The position numbers were made by a program, and so were the translations under genes. A DNA stretch of 64,000 bases, taken from assembly GCF_000002075.1 (NCBI RefSeq), contig NW_004797457.1, positions 795,612 to 859,611 on the forward strand. The letters are read 5' to 3'. The DNA is from Aplysia californica (lineage: Eukaryota). How positions within the stretch are numbered: the stretch's first letter is position 1; each line of letters opens with the position of its first letter. Shown in pieces: positions 5,308-59,127 of this stretch. The notes below the pieces were generated by a model. The model did no database searches. It worked only from the letters and a program-made list of their open reading frames with translations, and was not told where the DNA came from.

Positions 5308-6041
5308 GGGGGTGTAGCTATGGTCAACACCCAAATGCTATAGTTTTTGGTCTAACGCTTGCTTTTCTGCATCAAAGGGGGTGACATAGTACAAAAAAAG
5401 GTTACCAAGCAAAAAATTCAAGATTTTAGCCATAACAATCTCGAGCCATCAAAAATAAAGGATTGATTCAGCATTTTTAAAACCAATATTATATTTTGTC
5501 AATCATCAACACTCATCAAGATAGAAGCCTAATATTTGGCATGGCGATTACTGTTGGTAGGTAGAACAACCTTACAGAGCCAAATTTGAATTTTCTGTAC
5601 TAACTTGTGAGCTTTACAGTCCTTGTTATGCACTACATTCAGGTCTCCAATGTTTTAAGATTTTTTAAAATAAAAAAGGCCTAAAACTCAAATGTGTTCC
5701 ATAAACAGCAAAAATGCTGCTGTAAAGTTATAGAGAAATGTGTATAAAAGATTGTGTCCAAATGTGAAACACTTCTGACAGTAACTTTCTGAGATCTACT
5801 CAAAATAGTGTTGCAACCTGGTCAGATAAACAATTCTGAGAAAACTGCAAAGAGAGATAATTTTTGGTGAAGATTTTCCTACATTGCTACCTCTCTTAAA
5901 TGCATTTCCAGCTATTTCTAAGTTTGATAAGGAATTAGGCTTCTAAAGATGAATCCTTGATATTGATATCTATTAAGATACTTCAAAATTCGAAAACTGA
6001 TATTTTTTCAAAATTTTTACTGATCTGACCAGTGGATCCCC
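5308..6041. mobile_element. Non-autonomous DNA transposon, TTAA-flanked with GGGG termini (Kolobok-like)
   Basis: TTAA at 5304-5307 and 6042-6045, imperfect TIRs (ggggg..tggtca / tgacca..cccc). A second copy in opposite orientation, interrupted by insertions, lies at ~30976-35537. Confidence 0.65.
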
Positions 6042-6289
6042 TTAAAAAAAATGAATATATGATCTTTGCAGTCGTTGGGAAGATAAGTTTCTAAAAAGAT
6101 CGTGAACGTGTTTGACTTAGTTGGTTCCTAATGTCTGTCACCTCAGAATTGATAGAAAAATTTCTTTGAAAAGTTGGAATTAAAATAAAAACTAAATACT
6201 GTTGCAAAGTACTTGTGTCTTTGAGCGGAGATCCTTCCAGTTGGAGATATTGAATCTATGTACACAGTTCAGATTGTCACAGGTAGATC

Positions 6290-11707: not shown

Positions 11708-14700
11708 CTACAGTTCGGTCTTCCTTTGAGATGACTCTGAAAATTCTTTCATCCACTTTGGAAACAAGTCAGTCCAGATATCTCTTCTTGCCTTGATAGG
11801 GAACTGAGCCACAGCAAAATCAGGTTTGAAGTTCAGGTAAAATTCAGATTCTTCCTCATAAGGAGGCCATTCCATGTTCAAGTTCTCAGCCAGGGTCACA
11901 CCGGGATTTCTGTGAAGAAAAAAAACCACCCATGTAAAACTCGTTAGACTTATATTATTTCAAAATGAAAATTTTTTTCAATTCCTTTGTTTTGTTAAAC
12001 AGTTAACATACTGAATTAACGCCTGACTTCTCTCATGCATGTCCAACGGAATAAAGTTAACTTCCTAAAGAGTACAAAAAAAATGAGCTAGGCATAATTA
12101 TGCCCTATGACATTTTTATTCCTCTGCTATCCTGTGATTTCTCTGCTCTCATCAGCTTTTTTTACCCCACGTATTGAATGAATATTGAGTTGGGTGAATT
12201 ATATATTTATAGTAGTCTCCGTCTAAGATCCTGGTGCTCGGGAGTGAGGCAAATGCGGGATCTTAAGTGAACGGGATTTTAGCCGACGCACTAAGGGAAG
12301 AATCTATGGTGACCCATGTTAATAAGACCCACAACTGGTAAAATGGTCCCCCTCCATTCTAAAATGAACTAAAATGACCCCTGGGTGGGTTTATGACATA
12401 TGGCGGACTAAGAGTGGTCAACCTTGATGACCAATCACAATGGCAAGAGGCATGCCATTTCCTCTTATTATTCTATCGTGAGTCTCAAGATCTATGCTTA
12501 TCCAGTTGCCTCTCCCCTTTACCAGTCCAAAATTTATAGCTTTTCATCTCTGACAAGAGTTTCCCCACCTTTGTCCTTACACATCATCATTACGTTGTGA
12601 CCACACCAATCGAAATTCAGTCTATCTTGCAAACTTGGGAGTAGAGACAACTGTTGCAATTGTCAGGGAAGAGTTCACAGTTTGATGAGATCCCCCCTGG
12701 AGCAAACTTGTAGGCCATACCCATCCAGCGTGTGATGTAAGTTAAGGTGAAAAGCTTGGGGAAAACAAACATGACAGTCAGTTCACACCTTGGTGTGATC
12801 CTGTCAGGGGATAACATTGTACTGTTTCATCGAGTTTTACAACGCACATGTGATCACATTCATGAGAAAGGCTAATCTTTTACATGACGGGCAATTCAAT
12901 GATCTCAACTTTTCACTCCTGGTTGATTATCTGTGTCTGCCTGAGTTTTTGTTCCCCAAATTATGACCTGAAATGTGGGATCTTAGCCGAATGTAGATGT
13001 TCACAGTGAATCAGAGCGGGATCTTAGGGATGACTTTGGTGTAGTAAAAATTCTGCGTATTTATGTATGTATTTTATGTGTGTATTTATGTACATAATTT
13101 TAATTATGTTTACATATATGTATGTTTGCCATTGTAACCAAAATTTCCCAACGGGGATCAATAAAATATAATTTATTATTTATTTATCATTTATCTTAAA
13201 AAATTTTATCGACAAAAGGTGTAACCTAAATATATTTTTAAAATTCCATTATGCTCATATGACCTAGAACCACAATCCATAGCCTGAGATGAAAGTCTGT
13301 ATTGTAAAAATTACACTTACAAAAAAATTAACCACAGTTAGATGGTGGTGGTGGTTGGAAGGTGGGGGGGGGGGGGGGGGGGTGTCAAGGGGGAACCCAA
13401 AAAAATGTAGTTAGCCTCACTCACCCAGATGCCATGAAGTCGGTTACAATTTTGATCAATGAAGACTTCAACTGGACATCTTCAGCAGTAAAAGTCTCAT
13501 TTGTTTCAAGGGAGTAAAACGATTTCAAAACATAGCTGGGTTGAAGATCAAACAGATACGTTAGATCAAAGCTATGAAATGTCCCCTCATGAGGAGCAGG
13601 CAAGAAACTTGGAAAGATGTCAAAATACAGAAAGTATGACTTCCCTGCTGCATCTTCTGGAGTCATCCCTGTGAGATAAACAACAAATAATAAGAATATA
13701 AGAGTCTGTCTTATGGAACTAAAGCAAACAATACACACTAAAAAGGAAAATGGTGTGTACGAAGCACATTTGACATCCACATAAACAATCGTTCATATTT
13801 TCATAATGTTATACATCATATAATGGCTATTCTGGGATTAAAACCAACACAAAGAAATAGAGGGGCCAACCCCCAAGATAAGTATAAATGGTTTTTTTTG
13901 GTAGCAAATGTGATCACATAAACAAGAGTGGTTGATCTATGATGCAACGGATAGTTCAATGATTGCAAATTTTCACTCTTGGTTAGTCAGCTGTGCCCGC
14001 CCACGTTTTTGTTCCATAAATTATGATCTGAAATGCGGGATTTCAGCCTAATACAAGGGAGTTCAATACGTCTTTGGTCTAAATATGAAGGAATAAAGAC
14101 AGAGCTTTGTAACTTGGCACATATACTTTCATTTCTCTACTTAGTCACCATGCGGAGTAACACATTTCTGCCACCTCTCTTTGACCTTTAAAAATCCTTG
14201 AGAAAAAAATGACCCAGAATGGGCTCCTAACCAGTCTTCTTCAGCTTCAATGGTGTCTTCATTGTCATGGAAATGACGTCCATTCAGAGGTTTTTTAAGA
14301 TTAGGAAACAGAAAAAAGTCAGAAGGGACTAGGTCTGGTGAATAAGCCCGGTGTGGCAGGATTTCAAAGCCGCACTGTTCTGCTGTCTGGACTGTTTGTT
14401 GTGCTCTGTGTGCAGGGGCGTTGTCATGCCATAGGAGGACTCCATTGCGGAGTTTTCCACATCTTTTTCTCACCAATTCGGACCACAATTTTATCAGCAA
14501 ACCCGAATAGTAGTCCCCTGTGACTGTTTTTCCAGTTTCCAGGTAGTCAGTCATGATACCTTCACAATCCCAGAAACACGACAGCATGACCTTTCCACTT
14601 GACGGTGTTACCTTTGCTTTCTTTGGTGAGGGAGAAGAAGGGGGTTTCCATTGCATGGAGGACAATTTTTGTTCTGGATCAAAATGATAAATCCATGTTT

Positions 14701-17700
14701 CATCCATAATCACCATGTTTTTAAAGAAATTTGTGTCACTGGACTCAATTCGAAAGAGAGTTTTGCAGGACTCAACCCTCTGCTTCTTTTGCTCACTTGT
14801 CAAAAGGCGGGGTACCCACCGCGCAGACATCTTATTCATGTTAAGACGGTCATGGAGAATCGTTTCAACTGACCCTACACTGATTCCCGTGTCACTTGAG
14901 AGCTGTTTAACAGTTATACATCAGTCTTGTAAAACCAGTTTCTTCACTTTGGATACATTCTTTTCAATTACCACAAAGGATGGGTGCCCTTCACGATCTT
15001 CATCCATCACCGACATGAATCCAGATTTGAATTTGCTTACACAGTATGGCACAGTATTATAACGAGGACATTTGTCACCATAAACTTGGACCATTTCCGG
15101 AAAAATGTCCGCAGGGGATTTTCCTTGCAAGTGTAAAAACTTGATAACTAAGCGATATATTCAACAGGCTCCATGGTACAGCTTCAGCAAAGAAACACCA
15201 AACACTTTTGTGCATGGTTTCATTGAACACGCTGACTAGTGCCTTATTACAGTCGGATTTTCACTAAAATTTGAATGGTGTTTTCCAAAAAAATTGTCAA
15301 AAGGCTGGCAAAATTTTATTACTCTACCATCATTTCTTCATACCCAGACCAAAGACTTATTGAACCCTCATCGTATGAAACTTTCACAGTGAACCAGAGT
15401 GAGATCTTAGGGGAGGCTTTTGTATAGTAAAAATTCTGTTTTCTTAAAACAGCAGAATCTTAAGCAAACTGGGATCAAAAGCGGTGGGATCTTAGGTGGA
15501 AACTACTGTACTATCATTTAAACTGACTGAAATTATGCCGTTTCTACGATCAGAACGAGTACAAATGAGGTAGAAACAATTGCAGTAAACGTGTTTAGTC
15601 AGAAATCAACAAAACAATCTTTTTCAACACAAGATGAAGTAAATATTGAAAAGGCACATCAAATTAAAACCCTGAAAGCAGGCCCTAATAACATTGTTAG
15701 CCTTAGTTAAGTCAACACAATTCTTACTGTTTGTATCACTTCCATTTGAAGTTAATGTGGAAAAAAAATAAATTACACGCTTTTAAAACTAAAAGGTCAC
15801 CTTTGAATTTTGAAGTGTGAATCCTCAAGAAATCAAAAGTAGGTACTGCCAGTATGGGGTCCGACCAAATATCATGCACTTTATTGATGCTCGAGACCTC
15901 TGGCTGACTGTATGATTCATAGGCCTTTTCAATCACTGGTAGTGGCACTCTGACTTTCTTGCTTAAGAATTCCTTTTCAGTCTCGTCAGCTGTGCAAGAT
16001 GAAATTTTTAAAAGTGCTTACTTTAGCAGATAATAACAATAAAGAAGAGTAGAACCAGGAACCTTGAAATAAAACAAAAACTTTGCTTCCAAAGACTAGG
16101 TCAGTTTGTTCGCAAACTGTTTCTCAAGACTATTTTATGGAAAATAAGAACTTTTTGTATACAGTTTACATCTTTATCAACAAAATCAAGTTCATTTCAG
16201 GGAAAAGTTGTCTGACCAAGTCTGTCAAGGTTAGCCTGCACTAAGTGGGATACAGTATCCTACAAGACATTCTGAGATATATGATGAAATAGCTTTCCCA
16301 CTCAGGGATTGAACTCAAATCTTCCGCATGCAGCAGCAAAGAAGATAACCACTGCTTGGATATCTTTTCTTAGAGTTAGAGTTTGGTGTTTTCTATTCAT
16401 GGCAGTTTTCAATTAACACTATCATGGGCTTAGTGATGGAATCCCAAACTGCAGCATAAAAATTACAACAGGAAACCAGATTCCCATCACTGACTTATCA
16501 CTTGTGTGCTTCTTAGTTTCTTAAGATTACAACATTGTCAGTACATGCTGGACTCAAGGCTTCACATGCAGGCAGGCAGTGCATATCATTAGGCCAATAT
16601 TCACCAGTCGCTGCACTGCTATTTGTACTGAAAATCAAGAAAAATCCAAGATCATGTTTTTTTCGGCAAATAGGAGATAAAAAAAGATATTAATCCTATT
16701 ACTTTCGTTAAAAGTGTCAAATCATGATCATGTTTGTGGGATATATTCATATTTGTAGATTACTGATACCAAACTTTGATAGAAAGGTGCAGGACTTTCA
16801 TTTAAATAGACACATTAAAAATGTCAGTCTGACCCTGATCGTATGCATGGTACGTGTATTAGTATTAGGTTTTCCATTCGAATAGCAGTATACATGCTGG
16901 AGAATATTAAACAGTACTCATCAGAGAATGTGGAAATAGTCCTTTCTTGCAACAGCACTCCTCAAAACAAAAATCCAGACCTGTCACTCTATGACATCTA
17001 AAAATCAGGATCGCAGGGGAAAAAAATCAGGATTTGGGAAAAAAAATCGGGATCAGCCACAAATCACCAAGGTGACAGCAAATTTTGTTTAAAATTTCAC
17101 AGGTTTTTCCTTAAATTCATGTATATACATGCATATCCCTCTGTGTGTGTGTGTGTGTCGGTTTTAAAAAAATCCTGATGTATTAAGTCAAGTACTCCTA
17201 GTCCAAGTGTCTACAATCCCCCTCCCCCTCTCCGATATAAATCCCTAAAGATGCTTTAACCAGTGTGCATATGAACTGAAGTTGACCCAGTCAACGGACG
17301 GGCCCCGACACACGCGCCGAAGTCGCACGTCAAAGTCATGTTACGTGATGTGAATGCACGATTGAAACAGTCCTACTGATGGGTCTTGATGATAGGCCTT
17401 ACTCCAACTAACCAGAACTCGGACAAAGTTTTAAAAAAAGTAACAGCAGAAGTAAGAATAATATTGATCATTTGTATTCTCAATTGAAACAGTTATTAGA
17501 CCATCATCGGAGAATTCTGAGTGGAAACATAAGCGAGAGTAGCTTAGATCTTGAGAATGTACCAAGTCAGAATGCCAACTCGATACTACTTCCATTATAG
17601 TTGAAATAAAACGTGGGAGCAAAGATCCAACAAAACTTGGGGCAAGTTAACTACTAAATCTGGCATTGATATTTAGGAAAATAGTGCTCCAAGTTCCTGC

Positions 17701-40875: not shown

Positions 40876-40898
40876 ACACCTCTGATCTTCAGCACTTA

Positions 40899-41439
40899 CG
40901 AGGGGCATACCAAAAGTTTTTTACCTGACCATGAAGGAATAAAGGTAGAAAGCTGAAATTTGGGGTGAAAGCCAACAATCATCTTTCTAGAATGCATTTA
41001 AATTTTGGGGAATTTCAGATTTCTGGTTTTACGACCAGCACAGTGTAAGTGAATGGGGATATGTTGTTCTCCAGTTTCAACATAAAAATGGAGAAAATTG
41101 AGGGCAGTGCAGTAATGAAATATTTGTTCTCGCCTTGCAAGTAACTACAGGATATTTTTACGGAGATGCATGCCGTATGGAACTGATTGCCCATCCTATG
41201 CTGTGATAAAATTTTGGTGTAAAAAAAGTGATGATGAGATCAAAGTAGCGGTAGAGGGCTGGTTTTCTGACATAGAGAGGGTCCTCTACTCTCAGGGTCT
41301 TTTCAAGGTCATTCACAGATGGCAAACATGTATAACTCTGGGAGGCGACTACATTAAGAAAGACTAAGTTTAGTACCAAATTTCAGCTTTCTACTTTTAG
41401 TCTCTCATGGTCAGGTAAAAACTTTTGTTATGCCCCTCG
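40899..41439 (+). mobile_element. Internally deleted mariner derivative (541 bp)
   Basis: TA on both flanks and ~65-bp TIRs cgaggggcata.caaaagtttt..acctgaccatga... Retains the transposase N-terminus (MEKIEG.AVMKYLF..YG.DCPSY) joined to the C-terminus (SDDEIKVAVEGWF...RWQTCITLGGDYIKK). Confidence 0.88.
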
Positions 41440-41884
41440 TAGATGGCCTTATTGTGTTTCAAGTTATTAGGCTCAATCTAAGCCATAAAACTTTTTCTAA
41501 AACTAAAAAGATGTAAATCAAGGTTCGATTTGAGTGCAGAGGTTTTTTATCAAGTATCTATGTCCGTCTGCTGGGATGTGGCATCCCTCTCAGCCTCGGT
41601 TGGCTCTGAAAGGCAGGGTTGAAGCAGCCGGCCTTCTAAATAATCAAAATTGTGTCGATGCGGATGTAAAACAGAAATTCAAATGCCAGAGACTGTCTGA
41701 AGCTGCCTTACAAGTTGTGGTACTAAAATTCTCCAAGAGATAAAAATTCATTTTATAGTTATATAGGCCCACATTGACATAATGTACATGCCCGTTGTAT
41801 TGAGTGTGGAGTGGTGGGGCTACCACATTTCATGATCTACTTAGGACATGTGTTCAAATCTTTTACGAAAGGGAAATATTTTTA

Positions 41885-48100: not shown

Positions 48101-51100
48101 TGTGCAAAAGCTCCAAACGCTCAACCTGTTGCTCATCACTGATGGAGCAAGAGAAGGTAAAATAACTTCAGTGATTATATAAAATAACATAATGTCTGTG
48201 TAGGAATGTACTCCAATTGATTCTTAGCTGTTAAAGAGATCTGCATTAGGAGAGTACTGGGTATAGGTGTTCTTTAACCCCCCCTCATTATTTCCTTCCT
48301 TTTCTACTCAGTGAAAGTCACTCTCACTCTCAAGACCAAATACATTGTATAAAACTTTGCTATGATTATGTAGGCCTGGAATACAGTCTTTCTTCCGATA
48401 TGAAAAATCTACACAGTAGTCTAGTTATCAGTGCAAAAGAAAAGGAACAAGCACAAAGATAAAATACCATGCAAAAAAAAGTCAAATGCAAAAACTTTCA
48501 TGAAAATTGTAGGATTATGCAACTTTGAATGCTGTAGAAGAATCACAACATACAAAGCCCTCTGTAAAGACACAGATCTAAAATCTTATAAGAACTATAA
48601 TGTTTTTGCTAAAACATAATATCCAACGCATTTTTGGTGAAATCAGGATATCCAACTATGTATTTTTACTGAACCCATGACTATTATTACACATCTTTTA
48701 AAAAATAAAATACACCCAAAGCAGTTTCAGTGAAACCAGCATTTTACATACAGTTCCTTGTTGTAATACAAGTTTGGCTATTGCATGATAGATCATAGGA
48801 ATATGTCCTCCGCCCATCATACTTTATCTTTACCAATGAAAGAATGTGAATTTTAAAAAATAAAAAGTAGTAAAAATCAATAGGCCCACATAAGTGTAAT
48901 GCATTCTGATTTCTCTATTATTAATTATTACTACATAGGTATGTATTCAGACAGGAACAGCATCAGTTGTAGCCTGATGATTACTGGTTAGGCTCTTAGT
49001 CTTAGACGCTGGATACAGAAAACAAAGAGTTTGATTCCCAAGTGATTAAATTATTCTATCACGTGTCTCCATCTGTCTGCTAGGATGTTGTTTCCCGCTC
49101 AAATTTTGCCCATGGGAGTGTAAAATAAAAATAAAAACCAAATATTAGGTCACCACATTAACTTCCAGTATGTTCATTTGAATCTTAATTTAAATCAATA
49201 CAAGCACCTCTTTTGTTGCAGATAACATATTACTACAAAGATTTCGCTGAAATAAGATTTCATTACACTTTTACAAATCAAGGCTAGATAAATATATGTG
49301 TGGGGGTGTGCCTGAAGAAAGGTCCCAGTTGTCTGCAAAGCCATTTTTGAGCAACAGGGTGAAAAGGTAAAAAAATCGTACTCAACTCATTCGCTTTGTA
49401 TTATTTTCGGCTTGTGGACGAATTTTTTTCGGGAGGGCGAATTGAGATGGCGACTAGTGCGCAGTTCACAGGTCTTTGGGGCCATAAATTCAAATAAATA
49501 TCAACATATTATATACCAACATTTTCAGTATGGTTTGTAGAAAACATCTGTATTGTTTATTTGTGTATTTTTCAACTTTGATTCCTGTAAGAGGCGATTA
49601 TGCAACACAATTGTGATTGGCTGCAGATAAAATTTGAAAAAAAAAATTTAATAATCTCAGTTGAAACTCAAAAAATATGTTTGCACCTAGATCTAGTCAA
49701 ATGATACTATTGATACATCAAAATAACCATAACTGTATATAGAACAAGAAAATATTGAAAAATGTGAGGTTATTTACACACATTCCATCAATTTTGTACA
49801 TTTTGATCATAACATCCGATATTGAAAAAAAAATAATTTTTTAATAATTTTGAAAAAAGGATCACAAACAGAAAAAAACCCACTCGTATCTTGTATGGAA
49901 TTATTCAGAATTGCATTTGGAATAAACCTATATGTATCTTGAGTGGTACTTTTTCAGTAATTTCACCAAAAAATAGTGATTTTAGGGAGAAAAAAATATT
50001 TTGCCTATTTAGATCTAGGCCTAGGTCTAGCACTCAAAAATATTGATTTCTCAATTACAGTGCACTGGCAATTTGAGTCCAATAGTATCAATATTATAAA
50101 GAAGAGTTCTACATTTCTTTAGTGAGCAAAATAACGTTATATTTTGTTGTGTAAAAGTACTAAGACTCGTGTGTGGGCTATAATTTGGGCTTCGTGATAA
50201 AACAATGTCGCATAAACTTCGAAATCGTGTTTTAAAACTGAATCAAAACTTCCGATTTTCGGTGGAAACGCTTGACCCGGAAGTCAACGTTATATTATGA
50301 CCTTTATTTTAACATGGATATGTGGATTGGAATAGAAACCAAGCTAAAATTGAACGTCGGTTCTCAAGCCGCCGGGGGCGGCTTAGTGTACTGACGGCAC
50401 TTTAGTCGCGCCGCCCCCCTACGGCTCGGCGTAGCGAATGAGTTAAGAGAACTGGTAAAAAATTTAGTTCCATCAGTAAACATATGTTTGACCATTTCTT
50501 AATAGCATATTGAAAGGAATTTATAACATTTTAAGGTTTAATATTTTTTATCAGTTTTTTCTGTGGCATGTTGTACTTCATCGAAGGTTACAAGGTGATA
50601 GAAACTGGGGTATTCTCCAAACTTTGTTTTTACATCCTGTGTTACAAAATGTGGCATGTCTCTAAAATTGCTCAAGATATTTGAAAAATGTAAAAACCAG
50701 TGTGTTCAACATTGAATTGGTCACAAAAATATATGCCCTTATTTCAATATATCTAAAATATTCGACAACTGGGCCCTTTCCCTAGGCACACACAATAGGC
50801 TTATACAGATGTAGACTTACAAAAAGTGAAAGTAGACTCTTGGTAATATGCAAGGAACCAAAACAATGATAGTCACCAAGATGATTAGCAGTATCCACCA
50901 TCTCGCGCCATTGTCTGCAATAAAGAATATTTTAAACTTTATACAATACAAACGTGAAAAAACAGATACAAAACATAATGGGTAATGATTTCGCCTACCG
51001 TATAACACGGGGATAGATCGAACACAGAAGACTAAAAAATCATACAACCGTCAAACTGTAGATACGGTCCTATTTTTTTTTCTTCTTTATCTCTGTAAGA

Positions 51101-55690: not shown

Positions 55691-56094
55691 NNNNNNNNNN
55701 NNNNNNNNNNNNNNNNNNNNNNNNNNNNNNNNNNNNNNNNNNNNNNNNNNNNNNNNNNNNNNNNNNNNNNNNNNNNNNNNNNNNNNNNNNCCCCCTTAAA
55801 ATATGTTTGTTAGCGCAACATCAAATTCGTTCATCCTGAATGAGAACTGAACACTCCAGTAATAACTTTCACCACTCCTCTACAAAACCATTCAAAGGCA
55901 CAACCCATAGGACGGTATGTCAAGTTCACCTCCCTCATGATCACGGTCACAGAGTCACTTAAAATAGCGGCAAGAAGATGAACCAATCATAATTCTCTTG
56001 AGCACTCCGCTGGATTGCTCCGTTGATCACATACTTTTGGAATTGAATAGCGTACAGTCTATCGCGTTTATTTTTAGACTGCCTACTGTGGGCT

Positions 56095-58268
56095 CAGGGG
56101 CGGCTCGTGGGTCTAAAAAGTAGGCGTGCACAATTAGGTTAGAGCAGGTTGAAGATAGTCAAGGGCATGTAAATTAGATGTTTTCTTCATCCTACCTGTT
56201 TTGAGAAAATCTATTTGAAGAAGAAGCTTTCCTTTCGTTCTTGGGCTTGAGCAAAAGTGTCCATTATTGTGTTGACGAAGTTGGGTATGTTGTCAATGAT
56301 ATCCTTGTGGATCGACATAAACGTACGTCAGTGCGATTTCTGGTATTTTGCATACTTCTCTAAATGATGTCTCGAATTTGTAGTTCTTCAGAGTTGAAGA
56401 AAGGCCCTGGATTATACATGTACGACACTGAGCAGATTTAATTGTTTCATTGCAATGTAATACTTATAATTCTGTTTGTAATTTGATTTTAAGCAAAACA
56501 GTAATATTTCTGTAAACGATCCTAAGAGAACTGTTGGAAACGACTTTTGATACTTCTGGAATTTGGATGAATCGCAGATTGAGAGTGCATTGATTTTATT
56601 TTGCTTCGAGAAACTGTCACAATTTGAGTAATTATTATGTCACAGGCCTACTTTGCAGCAATTTCGTTGGGGTTGTTGTGTCTGCGTCTCTTGGAAGCGT
56701 GTTTCTCTGTTGTCTGTCTTGTTGATGGAACAAGTATACTGTTTCTCATTTCATCGAAAGCTACTTTAAACGTGTCTAGAACTTGTTGGGCTGCTATGGG
56801 TGTTGTACTTCTGTGTTAGAGGATCCCATAAACAGCGTCAACGTGCGTGTATACTTTGTTGAAAAAGTGCAAAAAGAAGAGAAATGCTTCGCTCTTTAAT
56901 ACATTCAGGATACCATCGTGAATGGAATTATCATCCCAGTGCTCAGACTGAATTTCTTCAAAACAGAGCTGGATCTCTCCTTTCCAAATGAAAACTGTGC
57001 TTATTAGTCGAGACTGTAAATTCCACCTTGTTTCAGATGGCCATGGAATATTCCGGTGACAAACACCGGTGCATTTTGTAGAGTGGGCAAAAAATGTCGA
57101 AGAGCCTGCATAGCATTAGCGAAAAATACCTCAGTTCCCCGACAAATCACCCTTTTTATGACCGCGAAGGGTGAGTTCGTGAGTTTCACAGGACAAAATA
57201 CACTAGACAACCTTACACAATACGTGTTTATTCTTTCTCACCAGTTCTTTATTGTGAGGCGTTGCAATGCGATGACCTACGACTAGCTGCGCTGCTATGT
57301 CTACATGTCCGAAAGTATGATACTTAACGGCATTTTTTACGTGCGCTCTTGATGACTTTCGACTTTAATGCGTTGTTTCAATTGGACAAGATCAGTAAAA
57401 CCTGTCTTAGACTAGATCTACTTGGGGTCCTCAGTTCCAAAAAGCAGACAGGAGAAACAGTAGGCCTAATCTAGGTCTACAAGGAATATAATTTGTTGTG
57501 TAAGCCACTCCACTTTTTATTCATTGTGTTATTTTGATATCTTTAGTTTGGTGAGGACTTAATTCATTCACCCTTTTCTTTTTACTTTGTTTGGTGAACT
57601 GAATTCATTTGCAATCAACTTCATTCATCCTGCATTGGAATACACACTCGAGTAATAAAACTTTCACCACTACACCATTCCAACTTCTAACACAATGACC
57701 TAATTACGTCATGTTGACCTCGCTCAAGTTCAGGGTTACAGAGGTGGGGCTAGAGATATAAATGGCAAGACAATGGACCAATCGCACATCGCTGGGAGCA
57801 CTCCGGTGGATTGCCCCAAAGCTATCATAATACGGGCATTGAATTGTGTAGGCTGTCGTGAACTGGTTTGAGATTGCGTTATTTTTAGACTGCGTCTATG
57901 GGCTTTGTTCGGCTGGAGCACATCGAGATTGTGCCGCCTTATTAATATTTATGAACTAAGAAACTCGGTCAAAACGTCATCGTTGTTTGGGTCGTCCCAT
58001 AGAGCATTTTCCGAGATAGATTACACACCTGAACATACTATTTTTTACTTGGGTGAAGCAAAAGAACTTGGTAGATCTATGTAATATTAGATGTTGTAGA
58101 GCTGTTGTAGATGTTGTAAGGAGCGAATAGGCTCTGGCGAGGAACCTGTACGTAAAACTGATTGGATGATGGATGGTAAAGGTTCTTTTGTTGTCACTTT
58201 GAAGGTGTTGTGCGCTAAAATTTTTGGGCGGCAGTGCACGACCGTGCTCTATGGACCAGCCGCCCCTG
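56095..58268 (-). mobile_element. Decayed hAT transposon (Tip100/ZMYM1-like transposase relic)
   Basis: TIRs caggggcggct(c/g)gt and a perfect 8-bp TSD TGTGGGCT (56087-56094, 58269-58276). Minus-strand relic ~57520-56212 shows a TTF-type Zn finger (EWL..LYCFSCLLFG..GFTDL), a DUF4371-like segment (VDIAAQL..H..VRKNKHVL..ELTLRGH), ETRWN, and the dimerisation tail (FMSIHKDII..IMDTFAQ..R..FFFK*), with stops and deletions. Confidence 0.88.
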
Positions 58269-59040
58269 TGTGGGCTATGTTTCGGCACTATTCGGCAGGA
58301 GCATATTTGAGATGTGCCGGCTTATTAATATTAATGTACCGGCAAACTCGCTACGAGTGTCGTCATTGCTTGGGTTATCCCAAATACCGATTTATAGGTC
58401 AGGTTACTAGTGTTGAATATCCCATTATGTTTAGTTAAAGCGTGTGGACTTTGGCAGGGCATAGTAGATGTTTCATGGCGCTATAGACATAGAAATGATA
58501 GTTACGGTGCAAGCGAGAACCTTGTTTTGATATTATATTTGGCTAGTGCTTGTTTCTTGCTTCTTTTATTTTATGTTTGTGGGTGCTTTACGTAATAGAA
58601 TATTTTTTAAAAATTGGGCGGCACTGCACGACCGTGCTCTATGGACGAACCGCGCCTGGCCACTATTTATACGAGGAAGGGGGGGGGGGGCACAAAAATA
58701 GGTATAAAAGTTATGAAAAAAGATAATACTCATTGCATTTATTACACAAACAAAGAAGGGCATATGACAATATCATACTTAAAATAAAAATAAAAAAGTG
58801 AGGAATCCGAGTGAGGAATCAAAAAATTGTGGGGCTTAGAGCCATTGCTGTTCTCTGCTGAAAACAGGAAGGAAAATTTTGAAGCGGTTTCATAATTCAA
58901 AAAGAAAAGAGGAAGGACTAAAGTTAGAAATTAATATTCCGATGCCCTCACTGAAAGCACAGTTGGAGTTGGCCCTACACGTAGGAAAAAAACTGGAGAG
59001 ATAATATTCACTGGCCTTCAGAAAAGTGTCTGTGTAGACA

Positions 59041-59076
59041 TCTCTGTCTGTCTGTCAGTCTGTCTGTCTCTCTGTC

Positions 59077-59127
<51 letters not shown>
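59041..59127. repeat. (TCTG)n microsatellite running into a gap
   Basis: Directly visible. Confidence 0.9.

What the first reader, a model, noticed from the sequence alone, without database searches (positions are those of the whole stretch)
57413..57479. Stacked TA-G..C-TA micro-insertions break a dead transposase frame: a recurrent 'scar' process at TA sites
Seen: on the minus strand the hAT relic reads ..TCC TTG TA[GACC TA GAT TA GGCC TA]C TGT TTC.. Removing the bracket restores S-L-Y-C-F of the TTF zinc-finger motif, so three short inserts, each duplicating TA, sit at one TA. Forty bases away, AAG TAG [ATC TAG] TCT AAG ACA GGT gives the expected K-(W>stop)-S-K-T-G once 6 bp are removed. 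Established: TA-targeting cut-and-paste transposons leave TA-(a few terminal nt)-TA footprints. Inference: the abundant TAGGCCTA/TAGATCTA/TAGACCTA/TAGGTCTA octamers here are not slippage microsatellites. They look like excision footprints of an element with G(G/A)...(T/C)C termini (or another TA-specific break/repair process) that revisits its own scars. No intact element with such termini and a TA TSD was identified in this window.
Basis: partly seen in the sequence, partly recalled or inferred. Interest (0 to 1): 0.78.

Follow-up and report, generated by a model that had tools for sequence, protein, structure and literature searches.

The report
Transposon-type scars stacked at TA sites
The short palindromes that break this dead transposase gene are real 6-letter insertions at TA sites. 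This animal genome holds about 230,000 of them, and they look like scars left by cut-and-paste jumping genes, but the gene that made the two commonest kinds was not found.

Summary
The sequence is as described. Window 56095-58268 (minus strand) is a 2.17-kb non-autonomous hAT element.

- **Private insert.** The 6-bp insert at 57413-57420 is absent from 28 of 29 other aligned copies. A second private one sits at 58072-58079.
- **Inherited stack.** The 17-nt stack (57461-57477) is in all 30 aligned copies, so it did not arise in this copy. It is still a true insertion: related copies carry no unit (18 hits), one unit (about 21) or all three (about 40) at the same TA.
- **Genome-wide counts.** TAGATCTA occurs 177,062 times and TAGGCCTA 52,570 times. 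The mixed forms TAGACCTA and TAGGTCTA (about 12,500 each) sit near their control of about 9,700. The signal is therefore the two palindromes, not G-R-Y-C.
- **TA specificity.** Enrichment appears only with TA flanks. At one TA of a SINE with 5,857 unchanged copies, all ten 6-bp insertions end in TA, against none that was independent at a non-TA control site.

Best reading (0.62): scars of the Tc1/Tc3/Minos type, made of the TA duplication plus two letters from each transposon end. TACATGTA serves as a positive control, because elements with CA...TG ends are present here. No parent with GA or GG ends was found in 361 kb. Other windows of this scan noted the same process.

The parts
56095..58268 (-). 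Non-autonomous hAT element of 2,174 bp, with terminal inverted repeats starting CAGGGGCGGC. It carries the decayed transposase frame.
   Evidence: Homology to 29 other copies ends at these bases. The repeats and 8-bp duplications are seen in several copies. Contigs of four runs join 56086 to 58269, skipping 2,182 bases with 8 shared letters. These are probably paralogous empty sites, because the flanks are themselves a high-copy repeat.
56087..56094 (.). 8-bp target-site duplication AGCCCACA of the hAT element. The other copy is at 58269-58276.
   Evidence: The joint with 8 shared letters is.
58269..58276 (.). Second copy of the 8-bp target-site duplication.
57461..57477 (-). 17-nt stack read on the minus strand after the target TA (57479-57478): GACCTA (57477-57472), GATTA (57471-57467) and GGCCTA (57466-57461). 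It was inherited from the family's master copy.
   Evidence: Present in all 30 aligned copies. About 40 genomic hits carry 17 nt here, about 21 carry 6 nt (mostly GGCCTG, once GGCCTA) and none carries 0 with exact anchors. The empty form ..CATTG-TA-CTGTTTCTAC.. has 18 hits against 0 for the control, and homology extends over 34-38 nt. Removing the stack restores the frame.
57413..57420 (.). TAGATCTA, a 6-bp insertion at the TA of a TAG codon.
   Evidence: 28 of the 29 other aligned copies have AAG-TAG-TCT (or AAG-AAG-TCT) with no insert. The closest copy, L002, has a 5-bp variant at the same place.
58072..58079 (.). TAGATCTA, a second 6-bp insertion at a TA, private to this copy of the same element.
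   Evidence: The other copies read ..ACTTGG-TA-TGG.. there.
49688..49695 (.). TAGATCTA, absent from the paralogous segment at about 31807-32132 of the window.
   Evidence: the partner reads TGCAC------CTAGTCAAA.
32852..32877 (.). Four-unit mixed array (TAGATC, TAGACC, TAGATC, TAGATC, then TA). Its paralogue at 50010-50029 has three units of partly different type.

Best explanation
The octamers TAGATCTA and TAGGCCTA are scars of cut-and-paste transposition at TA sites.

Proposed mechanism (inferred):
- A transposon of the Tc1/mariner/pogo type inserts at a TA and duplicates it.
- When it leaves, the staggered cuts leave two letters from each inverted end on the donor DNA.
- End joining then gives TA + XY + the reverse complement of XY + TA. 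This is a net 6-bp insertion and is always a palindrome.
- Ends beginning GA give GATC, ends beginning GG give GGCC, and ends beginning CA give CATG.
- Each scar offers two new TA sites. Later events can add units next to it, which builds mixed arrays. Slippage can then change the length of arrays that already have several units.

In this window:
- The ancestor of the hAT family was hit at one TA inside its zinc-finger codons. It first gained one GGCC unit and later two more. The element then multiplied, carrying the 17-nt stack with it.
- After this copy landed here, it was hit twice more, at 57413 and 58072.

Shown: the insertion polarity, the TA specificity, the palindrome rule, the stepwise series and the genome-wide scale.
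Inferred: that a transposon made the scars, and how many letters each end contributes.
For: 1. Polarity. In 52 kb of aligned hAT copies, about 7 of roughly 35 private insertion events of 3 bp or more are TA-G..C-TA. Among 6-bp insertions that duplicate exactly a dinucleotide, seven duplicate TA and two duplicate anything else.
2. A second family. At the TA in ..GAAGCC-TA-CTCTTATCGA of a SINE with 5,857 unchanged copies, all ten 6-bp insertions end in TA. They are GATC twice, GGCC twice, CCGG, TATA, TATG and three tandem duplications. A non-TA control site gave no independent event.
3. TA specificity. Of the 16 possible flanking dinucleotides around GATC, GGCC and CATG, only TA is enriched: 71 against 2.95, 25 against 1.9 and 27 against 4.6.
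4. Palindrome rule. Counts are 177,062 for TAGATCTA and 52,570 for TAGGCCTA, against 12,472 and 12,785 for the mixed forms, whose controls are about 9,700.
5. Positive control. Elements with a TA duplication and CAGT... ends exist here. Their predicted scar TACATGTA is about 6 times enriched and occurs as a private 6-bp insertion in L024.
6. Stepwise stacking. Related copies carry 0, 1 or 3 units at the same TA.
7. Mixed neighbours. TAGATCTAGGCCTA occurs 2,502 times against 4 for the control. Slippage cannot make that.
8. Published precedent. Sleeping Beauty leaves cag/ctg between the duplicated TAs (PMC5224488; PMC12255080). Minos excision alleles carry 4-, 6- or 8-bp insertions (PMC6980720).
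Against: - No element with a TA duplication and GA.. or GG.. ends turned up in 361 kb, although three elements with CA ends did. GATC scars outnumber CATG scars roughly 3 to 1 in the sample. Parents in proportion should therefore have been seen.
- The low share of mixed forms suggests many scars are young, at roughly 1-2% for one specific transition (my rough estimate). That makes the missing parent harder to excuse.
- Scars cluster strongly (variance-to-mean ratio 2.3 in 2-kb bins; dense runs on contig 1). Local hopping would explain this, but so would a regional break-and-repair process.
- At the AT-rich SINE site, the 6-bp inserts are mostly AT-only fillers (TTAA, ATAT, TTAT/ATAA). These may be subfamily markers or a different process.
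- The read data gave no usable evidence on polymorphism.
Confidence: 0.62

Rival explanations
1. A TA-specific break-and-repair process works without a mobile element. A host nuclease or a domesticated transposase cuts at TA with a 2-nt stagger. Fill-in duplicates the TA, and a short palindromic filler is added before ligation.
For: No parent element was found. Scars pile up in hot regions that hold both GATC and GGCC types. At two SINE sites nearly all 6-bp insertions duplicate TA, with a range of fillers that includes CCGG, TATA, TTAA and ATAT.
Against: An untemplated or hairpin-derived filler should not be dominated by two of the sixteen possible palindromes. The CATG class matches elements that are present here. 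No such process is known to me.
Confidence: 0.13
2. The units are what remains after abortive gap repair of an element whose inverted ends are themselves built of TAGATC/TAGGCC hexamers. Repair copies part of each end from the sister chromatid and anneals within the hexamers, leaving one to several units.
For: Arrays of 2-4 units, some mixed, make up about 15% of loci. Arrays sit inside repeated sequences and differ in unit number between paralogues. TA-flanked inverted repeats made of these hexamers are common.
Against: Single units dominate, 69 of 81 loci. No repeat family whose boundary is such an array was found. The 0/1/3 series needs separate events anyway.
Confidence: 0.1
3. This is an ordinary palindromic hexamer microsatellite, (CTAGAT)n, born and grown by replication slippage.
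For: True tandem arrays exist (window 28298-28323) and change length between paralogues. Some 6-bp gains are exact tandem duplications, such as L004 and the CTCTTA cases.
Against: Most loci are single units inserted where only the TA is shared with the flank. The strict need for TA flanks and the adjacent units of different sequence (2,502 cases) are not what slippage produces.
Confidence: 0.05
4. This is an assembly or library artefact, with linker or restriction-site letters added during cloning or sequencing.
For: AGATCT and AGGCCT are common cloning sites.
Against: The stack is shared, with point mutations, by dozens of diverged copies on different contigs. The inserts obey a TA rule and lie in the middle of repeats. 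Contigs of independent runs cover the region at 97% identity or more and show no 6-bp difference (weak evidence).
Confidence: 0.02

Closest known systems
Tc1/Tc3 excision footprints of Caenorhabditis elegans (TA-CA-TG-TA). The details are from my own knowledge of van Luenen, Colloms and Plasterk 1994 and were not checked here.
   Same: The TA is duplicated and two letters of each transposon end are retained. The result is a net 6-bp palindromic insertion. The identical word TACATGTA is enriched here, alongside elements with CAGT ends.
   Different: The dominant scars here carry GA/TC and GG/CC, and no matching element was seen. The scale, about 230,000 copies with TAGATCTA the most over-represented octamer in the sample, has not been described to my knowledge.
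Minos 6-bp footprint (Drosophila hydei Tc1-like element)
   Same: Excision leaves a short insertion at the TA. 4-, 6- and 8-bp insertions are reported for Minos excision alleles (PMC6980720).
   Different: As I recall it, the Minos scar is the four terminal letters of one end, produced through a heteroduplex, and it is not palindromic. Here only palindromic fillers are enriched.
Sleeping Beauty canonical footprint TA-C(A/T)G-TA
   Same: Three-letter overhangs from the transposon ends are joined between duplicated TAs (PMC5224488; PMC12255080). The 5-bp forms TAGCCTA and TAGGCTA are the two most enriched TA-NNN-TA words here, at about 3 times expectation.
   Different: The main class here is a 6-bp net insertion, not 5 bp.
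hAT superfamily non-autonomous elements (the host of the scars)
   Same: 8-bp target-site duplications, inverted ends starting CAG, and an internal relic of a transposase with a C-x2-C zinc-finger motif.
   Different: The tested 99-residue piece had no Pfam match. The coding part is heavily deleted.

Membership tests
Tc1/mariner-type excision footprint | The target TA is present once in the empty site and twice around the extra letters. | tested here: met
   Empty paralogues exist for 57413, 58072, L013 (two sites), L029, L033 and window 49688. The SINE site has 5,857 empty copies against 10 filled. The stack has empty relatives.
Tc1/mariner-type excision footprint | The extra letters come from the two inverted ends, so a 2+2 scar is a palindrome. 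| tested here: met
   GATC, GGCC and CATG are enriched only between TAs. The non-palindromic GACC and GGTC are about 1.3 times their control. This shows the palindrome rule, not the origin of the letters.
Tc1/mariner-type excision footprint | A parent element exists with a TA duplication and ends that match the scar. | tested here: not met
   For GA.. and GG.. ends none was found in 361 kb. Candidates at window 28504, 5524 and 40948 failed on their boundaries. For CA..TG ends the feature is met. The search covered 0.04% of the genome, so absence is not shown.
Tc1/mariner-type excision footprint | The same site is seen filled by the element and scarred, in different alleles or individuals. | tested here: inconclusive
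   Contigs of four runs were laid on 55791-59127. They are short pieces of a repeat and cannot separate alleles from paralogues.
hAT superfamily (host element) | 8-bp target-site duplication and short inverted ends starting C/TAG. | tested here: met
   AGCCCACA, ACAAAGGC, ATAGATAG and ACAACAAG flank four copies. The ends are CAGGGGCGGC...GCCGCCCCTG.
hAT superfamily (host element) | A recognisable hAT transposase domain. | tested here: inconclusive
   The longest open piece (99 residues) gave no Pfam family above threshold. The zinc-finger reading rests on the motif alone.
Slippage microsatellite | The new unit copies an adjacent unit. | tested here: not met
   Single units share only TA with their flanks. 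The feature is met only for a minority of exact tandem duplications and for length change in existing arrays.

The most novel reading that the evidence does not exclude
A TA-targeting transposon that is still unidentified and recently active, or a domesticated transposase, preferentially re-enters the palindromic scars it leaves. It would then build mixed (TAGATC/TAGGCC)n arrays and kilobase-scale hot spots from nothing. That would be a transposon-driven route to hexamer arrays, and a lasting genomic record of where the element has been.
Probability: 0.2. Interest if true: 0.75.

Novelty: new variant of a known kind. Interest (0 to 1): 0.6.

Why it matters
If these are excision scars, one class of transposon activity has written roughly a quarter of a million identifiable marks into this genome.

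- They make up about half of the 6-bp insertions in the one repeat family I could tabulate (5-6 of 11).
- Their sequence can be read, and they can in principle be dated from the decay of the palindrome.
- That would give a map of past transposon traffic and of germline-accessible regions, which ordinary repeat annotation misses completely.
- It would also show how scars can break reading frames in steps. Here a transposase zinc finger gained one unit and later reached three.
- It would show how short palindromic arrays can start without slippage.

The missing parent is the open point. Finding it would turn a strong resemblance into a mechanism.

Tried and rejected
- **More genome sequence.** After that I worked only with coordinates, counts and pattern matches.
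- **Reads.** Four runs were laid on 55791-59127. The contigs are 60-125-nt pieces of a repeat. The loose ends at 57418/57419 and 58084 show the empty form but probably come from paralogues, so there is no verdict on polymorphism.
- **Parent candidates rejected:**
  - Window 28504-30940 (TA-GGGGACC...): the conserved end starts three letters earlier, at TGTTAGGGG, and the TA belongs to a 33-bp subterminal repeat.
  - Window 40948-41391: internal to a mariner-like element whose ends are TA-CGAGGGGCATA.
  - Window 5524-5943: lies inside a longer young repeat.
  - L033 590-2064 and window 31163-31748: the inverted repeat runs on beyond the TA.
  - A repeat starting TA-GGTGGTTGG: this is one end of a SINE and has no inverted repeat.
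- **ISL2EU.** Considered because of its 2-bp duplication, but the paper gives AT within A|AT|T, not TA (PMC4482050). PIF/Harbinger (TWA) does not fit the flanks either.
- **Single element with a heteroduplex making all four G-R-Y-C forms.** Rejected, because the mixed forms are near background.
- **Target preference for CTAG.** Not seen. The first flanking base favours C or G in general.
- **Literature searches** for the octamers returned only primers and unrelated sites.
- **Site 6284** lies in unique sequence, so no paralogue test was possible.

Full report
**What is at the coordinates.**
The target TA is 57479-57478, and 17 extra letters follow it at 57477-57461: GACCTA, GATTA, GGCCTA. Forty bases on, TAGATCTA occupies 57420-57413.

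The host is a 2,174-bp element at 56095-58268. It has inverted ends CAGGGGCGGC...GCCGCCCCTG and 8-bp target-site duplications, AGCCCACA in this copy. Three other copies show other 8-mers. That makes it a non-autonomous hAT element. The one open piece of its relic frame that I scanned had no Pfam match. The genome has 927,310,431 bases in 4,332 contigs. I did not verify this.

**Which inserts are private and which are inherited.**
A search of the genome with 231 bases around the site gave at least 194 candidates, and I aligned 30 loci.
- The 17-nt stack is in every one of the 30 copies, with scattered point changes. This copy therefore inherited it.
- The 6-bp insert at 57413 is absent from 28 of the 29 others. 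The closest relative has a 5-bp variant at the same place.
- A full-length alignment (52 kb in all) found a second private TAGATC at a TA in this copy, at 58072.
- It also found the same kind of event in other copies: TAGATC in L013, TAGGCC in L013 and L029, a TAGATC that could also be a tandem duplication in L004, TAGCC in L028 and TACATG in L024.
- That is about 7 of roughly 35 private insertion events of 3 bp or more, and 5-6 of the 11 events of exactly 6 bp.
- A left-normalised tally of all pairwise gaps gave, for 6-bp insertions that duplicate exactly two letters, seven with TA and two with anything else.

**The stack really is an insertion, and it grew in steps.**
Removing the 17 letters gives an open 53-codon frame across the junction in five copies of the older subfamily, with ..SLYCFSC...

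I then asked the whole genome for the two 10-letter anchors with 0-24 letters between them. There were 61 hits against none for the control. About 40 have the 17-nt stack. About 21 have only six letters, mostly GGCCTG, once GGCCTA and twice CGCCTG. None has zero.

The empty form was sought as a 22-mer with up to two mismatches. It has 18 hits against none for the control, with consensus CATTG-TA-CTGTTTCTACTGTCT, which reads L-Y-C-F-Y-C. Two of those hits match our family over 34-38 letters.

Related copies therefore preserve three states at one TA: no unit, one GGCC unit, and three units. The two later units sit to the left of the first, at its left-hand TA. The family consensus does contain the bases, but an older relative does not.

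The 'W>stop' detail is not supported. The older subfamily has AAG (Lys) where this copy has TAG.

**Is it more than chance, and is it TA-specific?**
In 170 kb taken from four other contigs, TAGATCTA is the most over-represented octamer among those seen 12 times or more: 43 against 1.9 expected from an order-3 model.

In 232 kb (that sample plus the window):

| Word | Observed | Expected |
|---|---|---|
| TAGATCTA | 71 | 2.95 |
| TAGGCCTA | 25 | 1.9 |
| TACATGTA | 27 | 4.6 |
| TATGCATA | 15 | 3.6 |

With any of the other 15 dinucleotides as flanks, GATC, GGCC and CATG are at expectation.

Whole-genome exact counts:

| Word | Count | Control |
|---|---|---|
| TAGATCTA | 177,062 | 95,245, itself inflated because ATCTAGAT lies inside the arrays |
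| TAGGCCTA | 52,570 | 9,622, contains a CpG |
| TAGACCTA | 12,472 | about 9,700 |
| TAGGTCTA | 12,785 | about 9,700 |

The enriched set is therefore the palindromes, not G-R-Y-C. The small excess of the mixed forms is about what single transitions in the palindromes would give. As a rough estimate, 1-2% of units carry one given transition, which suggests many units are young.

**An independent test in a second family.**
A tRNA-derived SINE has 5,857 copies with an unchanged 25-mer around the site ..GAAGCC-TA-CTC... Ten further copies have exactly six extra letters after that TA, and all ten end in TA: GATC twice, GGCC twice, CCGG, TATA, TATG and three tandem duplications.

The same query with the six letters placed five bases upstream, at a non-TA position, returned only the two GGCC cases again and nothing independent.

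At a second, AT-rich TA of the SINE, 64 copies have six extra letters and about 55 of them end in TA. There the fillers are mostly AT-only (TTAA, ATAT, TTAT/ATAA), with GATC twice and GGCC once. Several of those are probably subfamily markers, so I do not count them as independent events.

**Stacking and clustering.**
- Of 81 loci in 232 kb, 69 are single units, 8 are double, 2 triple and 2 quadruple. Three arrays are mixed.
- Loci are over-dispersed, with a variance-to-mean ratio of 2.3 in 2-kb bins. Neighbours within 500 bp are more often the same type than chance predicts (22 same against 5 different, permutation p = 0.006).
- Genome-wide, a GATC unit directly next to a GGCC unit occurs 2,502 times, against 4 for the control. 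Uniform, independent targeting predicts about 350. Allowing for the regional clustering raises that to roughly 1,100, by my arithmetic.
- Mixed stacks are therefore common and cannot come from slippage. A special attraction to old scars is supported only about two-fold.

**Mechanism.**
The anatomy is that of Tc1/mariner-type excision: a duplicated TA, plus letters from the two inverted ends. A 2+2 scar is necessarily a palindrome, which fits the data.

The genome supplies its own positive control. Elements with TA duplications and CAGT... ends are present. Their predicted scar TACATGTA is enriched and was caught as a private insertion.

Published scars of this kind are cited from PMC5224488, PMC12255080 and PMC6980720. 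The Tc3 and Minos details are from memory.

ISL2EU, which has a 2-bp duplication, is excluded because it duplicates AT (PMC4482050).

**What is missing.**
I found no element with a TA duplication and GA or GG ends in the 361 kb available. Five candidates failed on their boundaries. Other TA elements in the data start with CG, CA or AG.

The read data were uninformative.

Other windows of this scan recorded the same process. One note names a pogo-like DDE-PHD transposon with GA...TC ends as a candidate. I could not test that.

**Verdict.**
1. The stack is inherited, not local to this copy.
2. Only GATC and GGCC are enriched.
3. The stop codon arose from Lys, not Trp.

The footprint reading is the best explanation at about 0.62. 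Its weak point is the missing parent.

Noticed in passing
window 14061-15365: A mariner element with TA duplications and imperfect inverted ends of about 44 nt. It carries a 259-codon open frame (14144-14920, minus strand) that matches Pfam Transposase_1 at E = 5.8e-18. Its ends start CA/CG, so it does not match the main scars.
   Followed up: partly
window 40897-41441: A 545-bp non-autonomous mariner-like element, TA-CGAGGGGCATA...TATGCCCCTCG-TA. The genome holds at least 617 candidate copies at 88-91% identity. Its 2+2 scar would be TACGCGTA, which was never seen in the sample. CpG decay of that word could feed TATGCATA, which is 4-5 times enriched. This last step is speculation.
   Followed up: partly
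window 28499-30945: A young, high-copy element (215 candidates at 94-98% identity). It has three 33-bp subterminal direct repeats at each end and conserved ends TGTTAGGGGACCGTACGCCCC. No clear target-site duplication is visible, and the interior is partly masked by N runs.
   Followed up: partly
window 32159-32658; also L034, L036, L039, L042: A tRNA-derived SINE of about 500 bp with thousands of copies: 5,857 keep one 25-mer unchanged. It is useful as a genome-wide 'mutation trap' for insertions at fixed TA sites.
   Followed up: yes
window 5424-6043: Part of a very young repeat. Copies on two other contigs (C292, C55) are 100% identical over 620 bases, and about 190 candidates lie at 95-97%.
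   Followed up: no
window 54999 and 61295; 55459, 61809 and 62121: Stretches that are identical letter for letter recur two or three times within 7 kb, next to several N gaps. This could be a local tandem duplication or an assembly duplication.
   Followed up: no
L025-L029, about 1270-1390 or 1846-1965 in locus coordinates: The older hAT subfamily carries a 104-118-bp miniature element with a TAA duplication and ends TACGGGGTGCCCAC, which is PIF/Harbinger-like. L004 carries an 856-bp Tc1-like insertion, TA-CAGTGGAAC...GTTCCACTG-TA. L013 carries a 713-bp element at a TTAA.
   Followed up: partly
window 56086/58269 (reads): Contigs of all four runs join the two flanks of the hAT element with 8 shared letters, and the flanks have very high depth. 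The element therefore sits inside another high-copy repeat, and other copies of that repeat act as empty sites.
   Followed up: no
G000 contig 1, about 199,500-214,600: A 15-kb region holds about 45 TAGATCTA and 9 TAGGCCTA words, while neighbouring tens of kilobases hold none or only a few. Both scar types share the same hot region.
   Followed up: no
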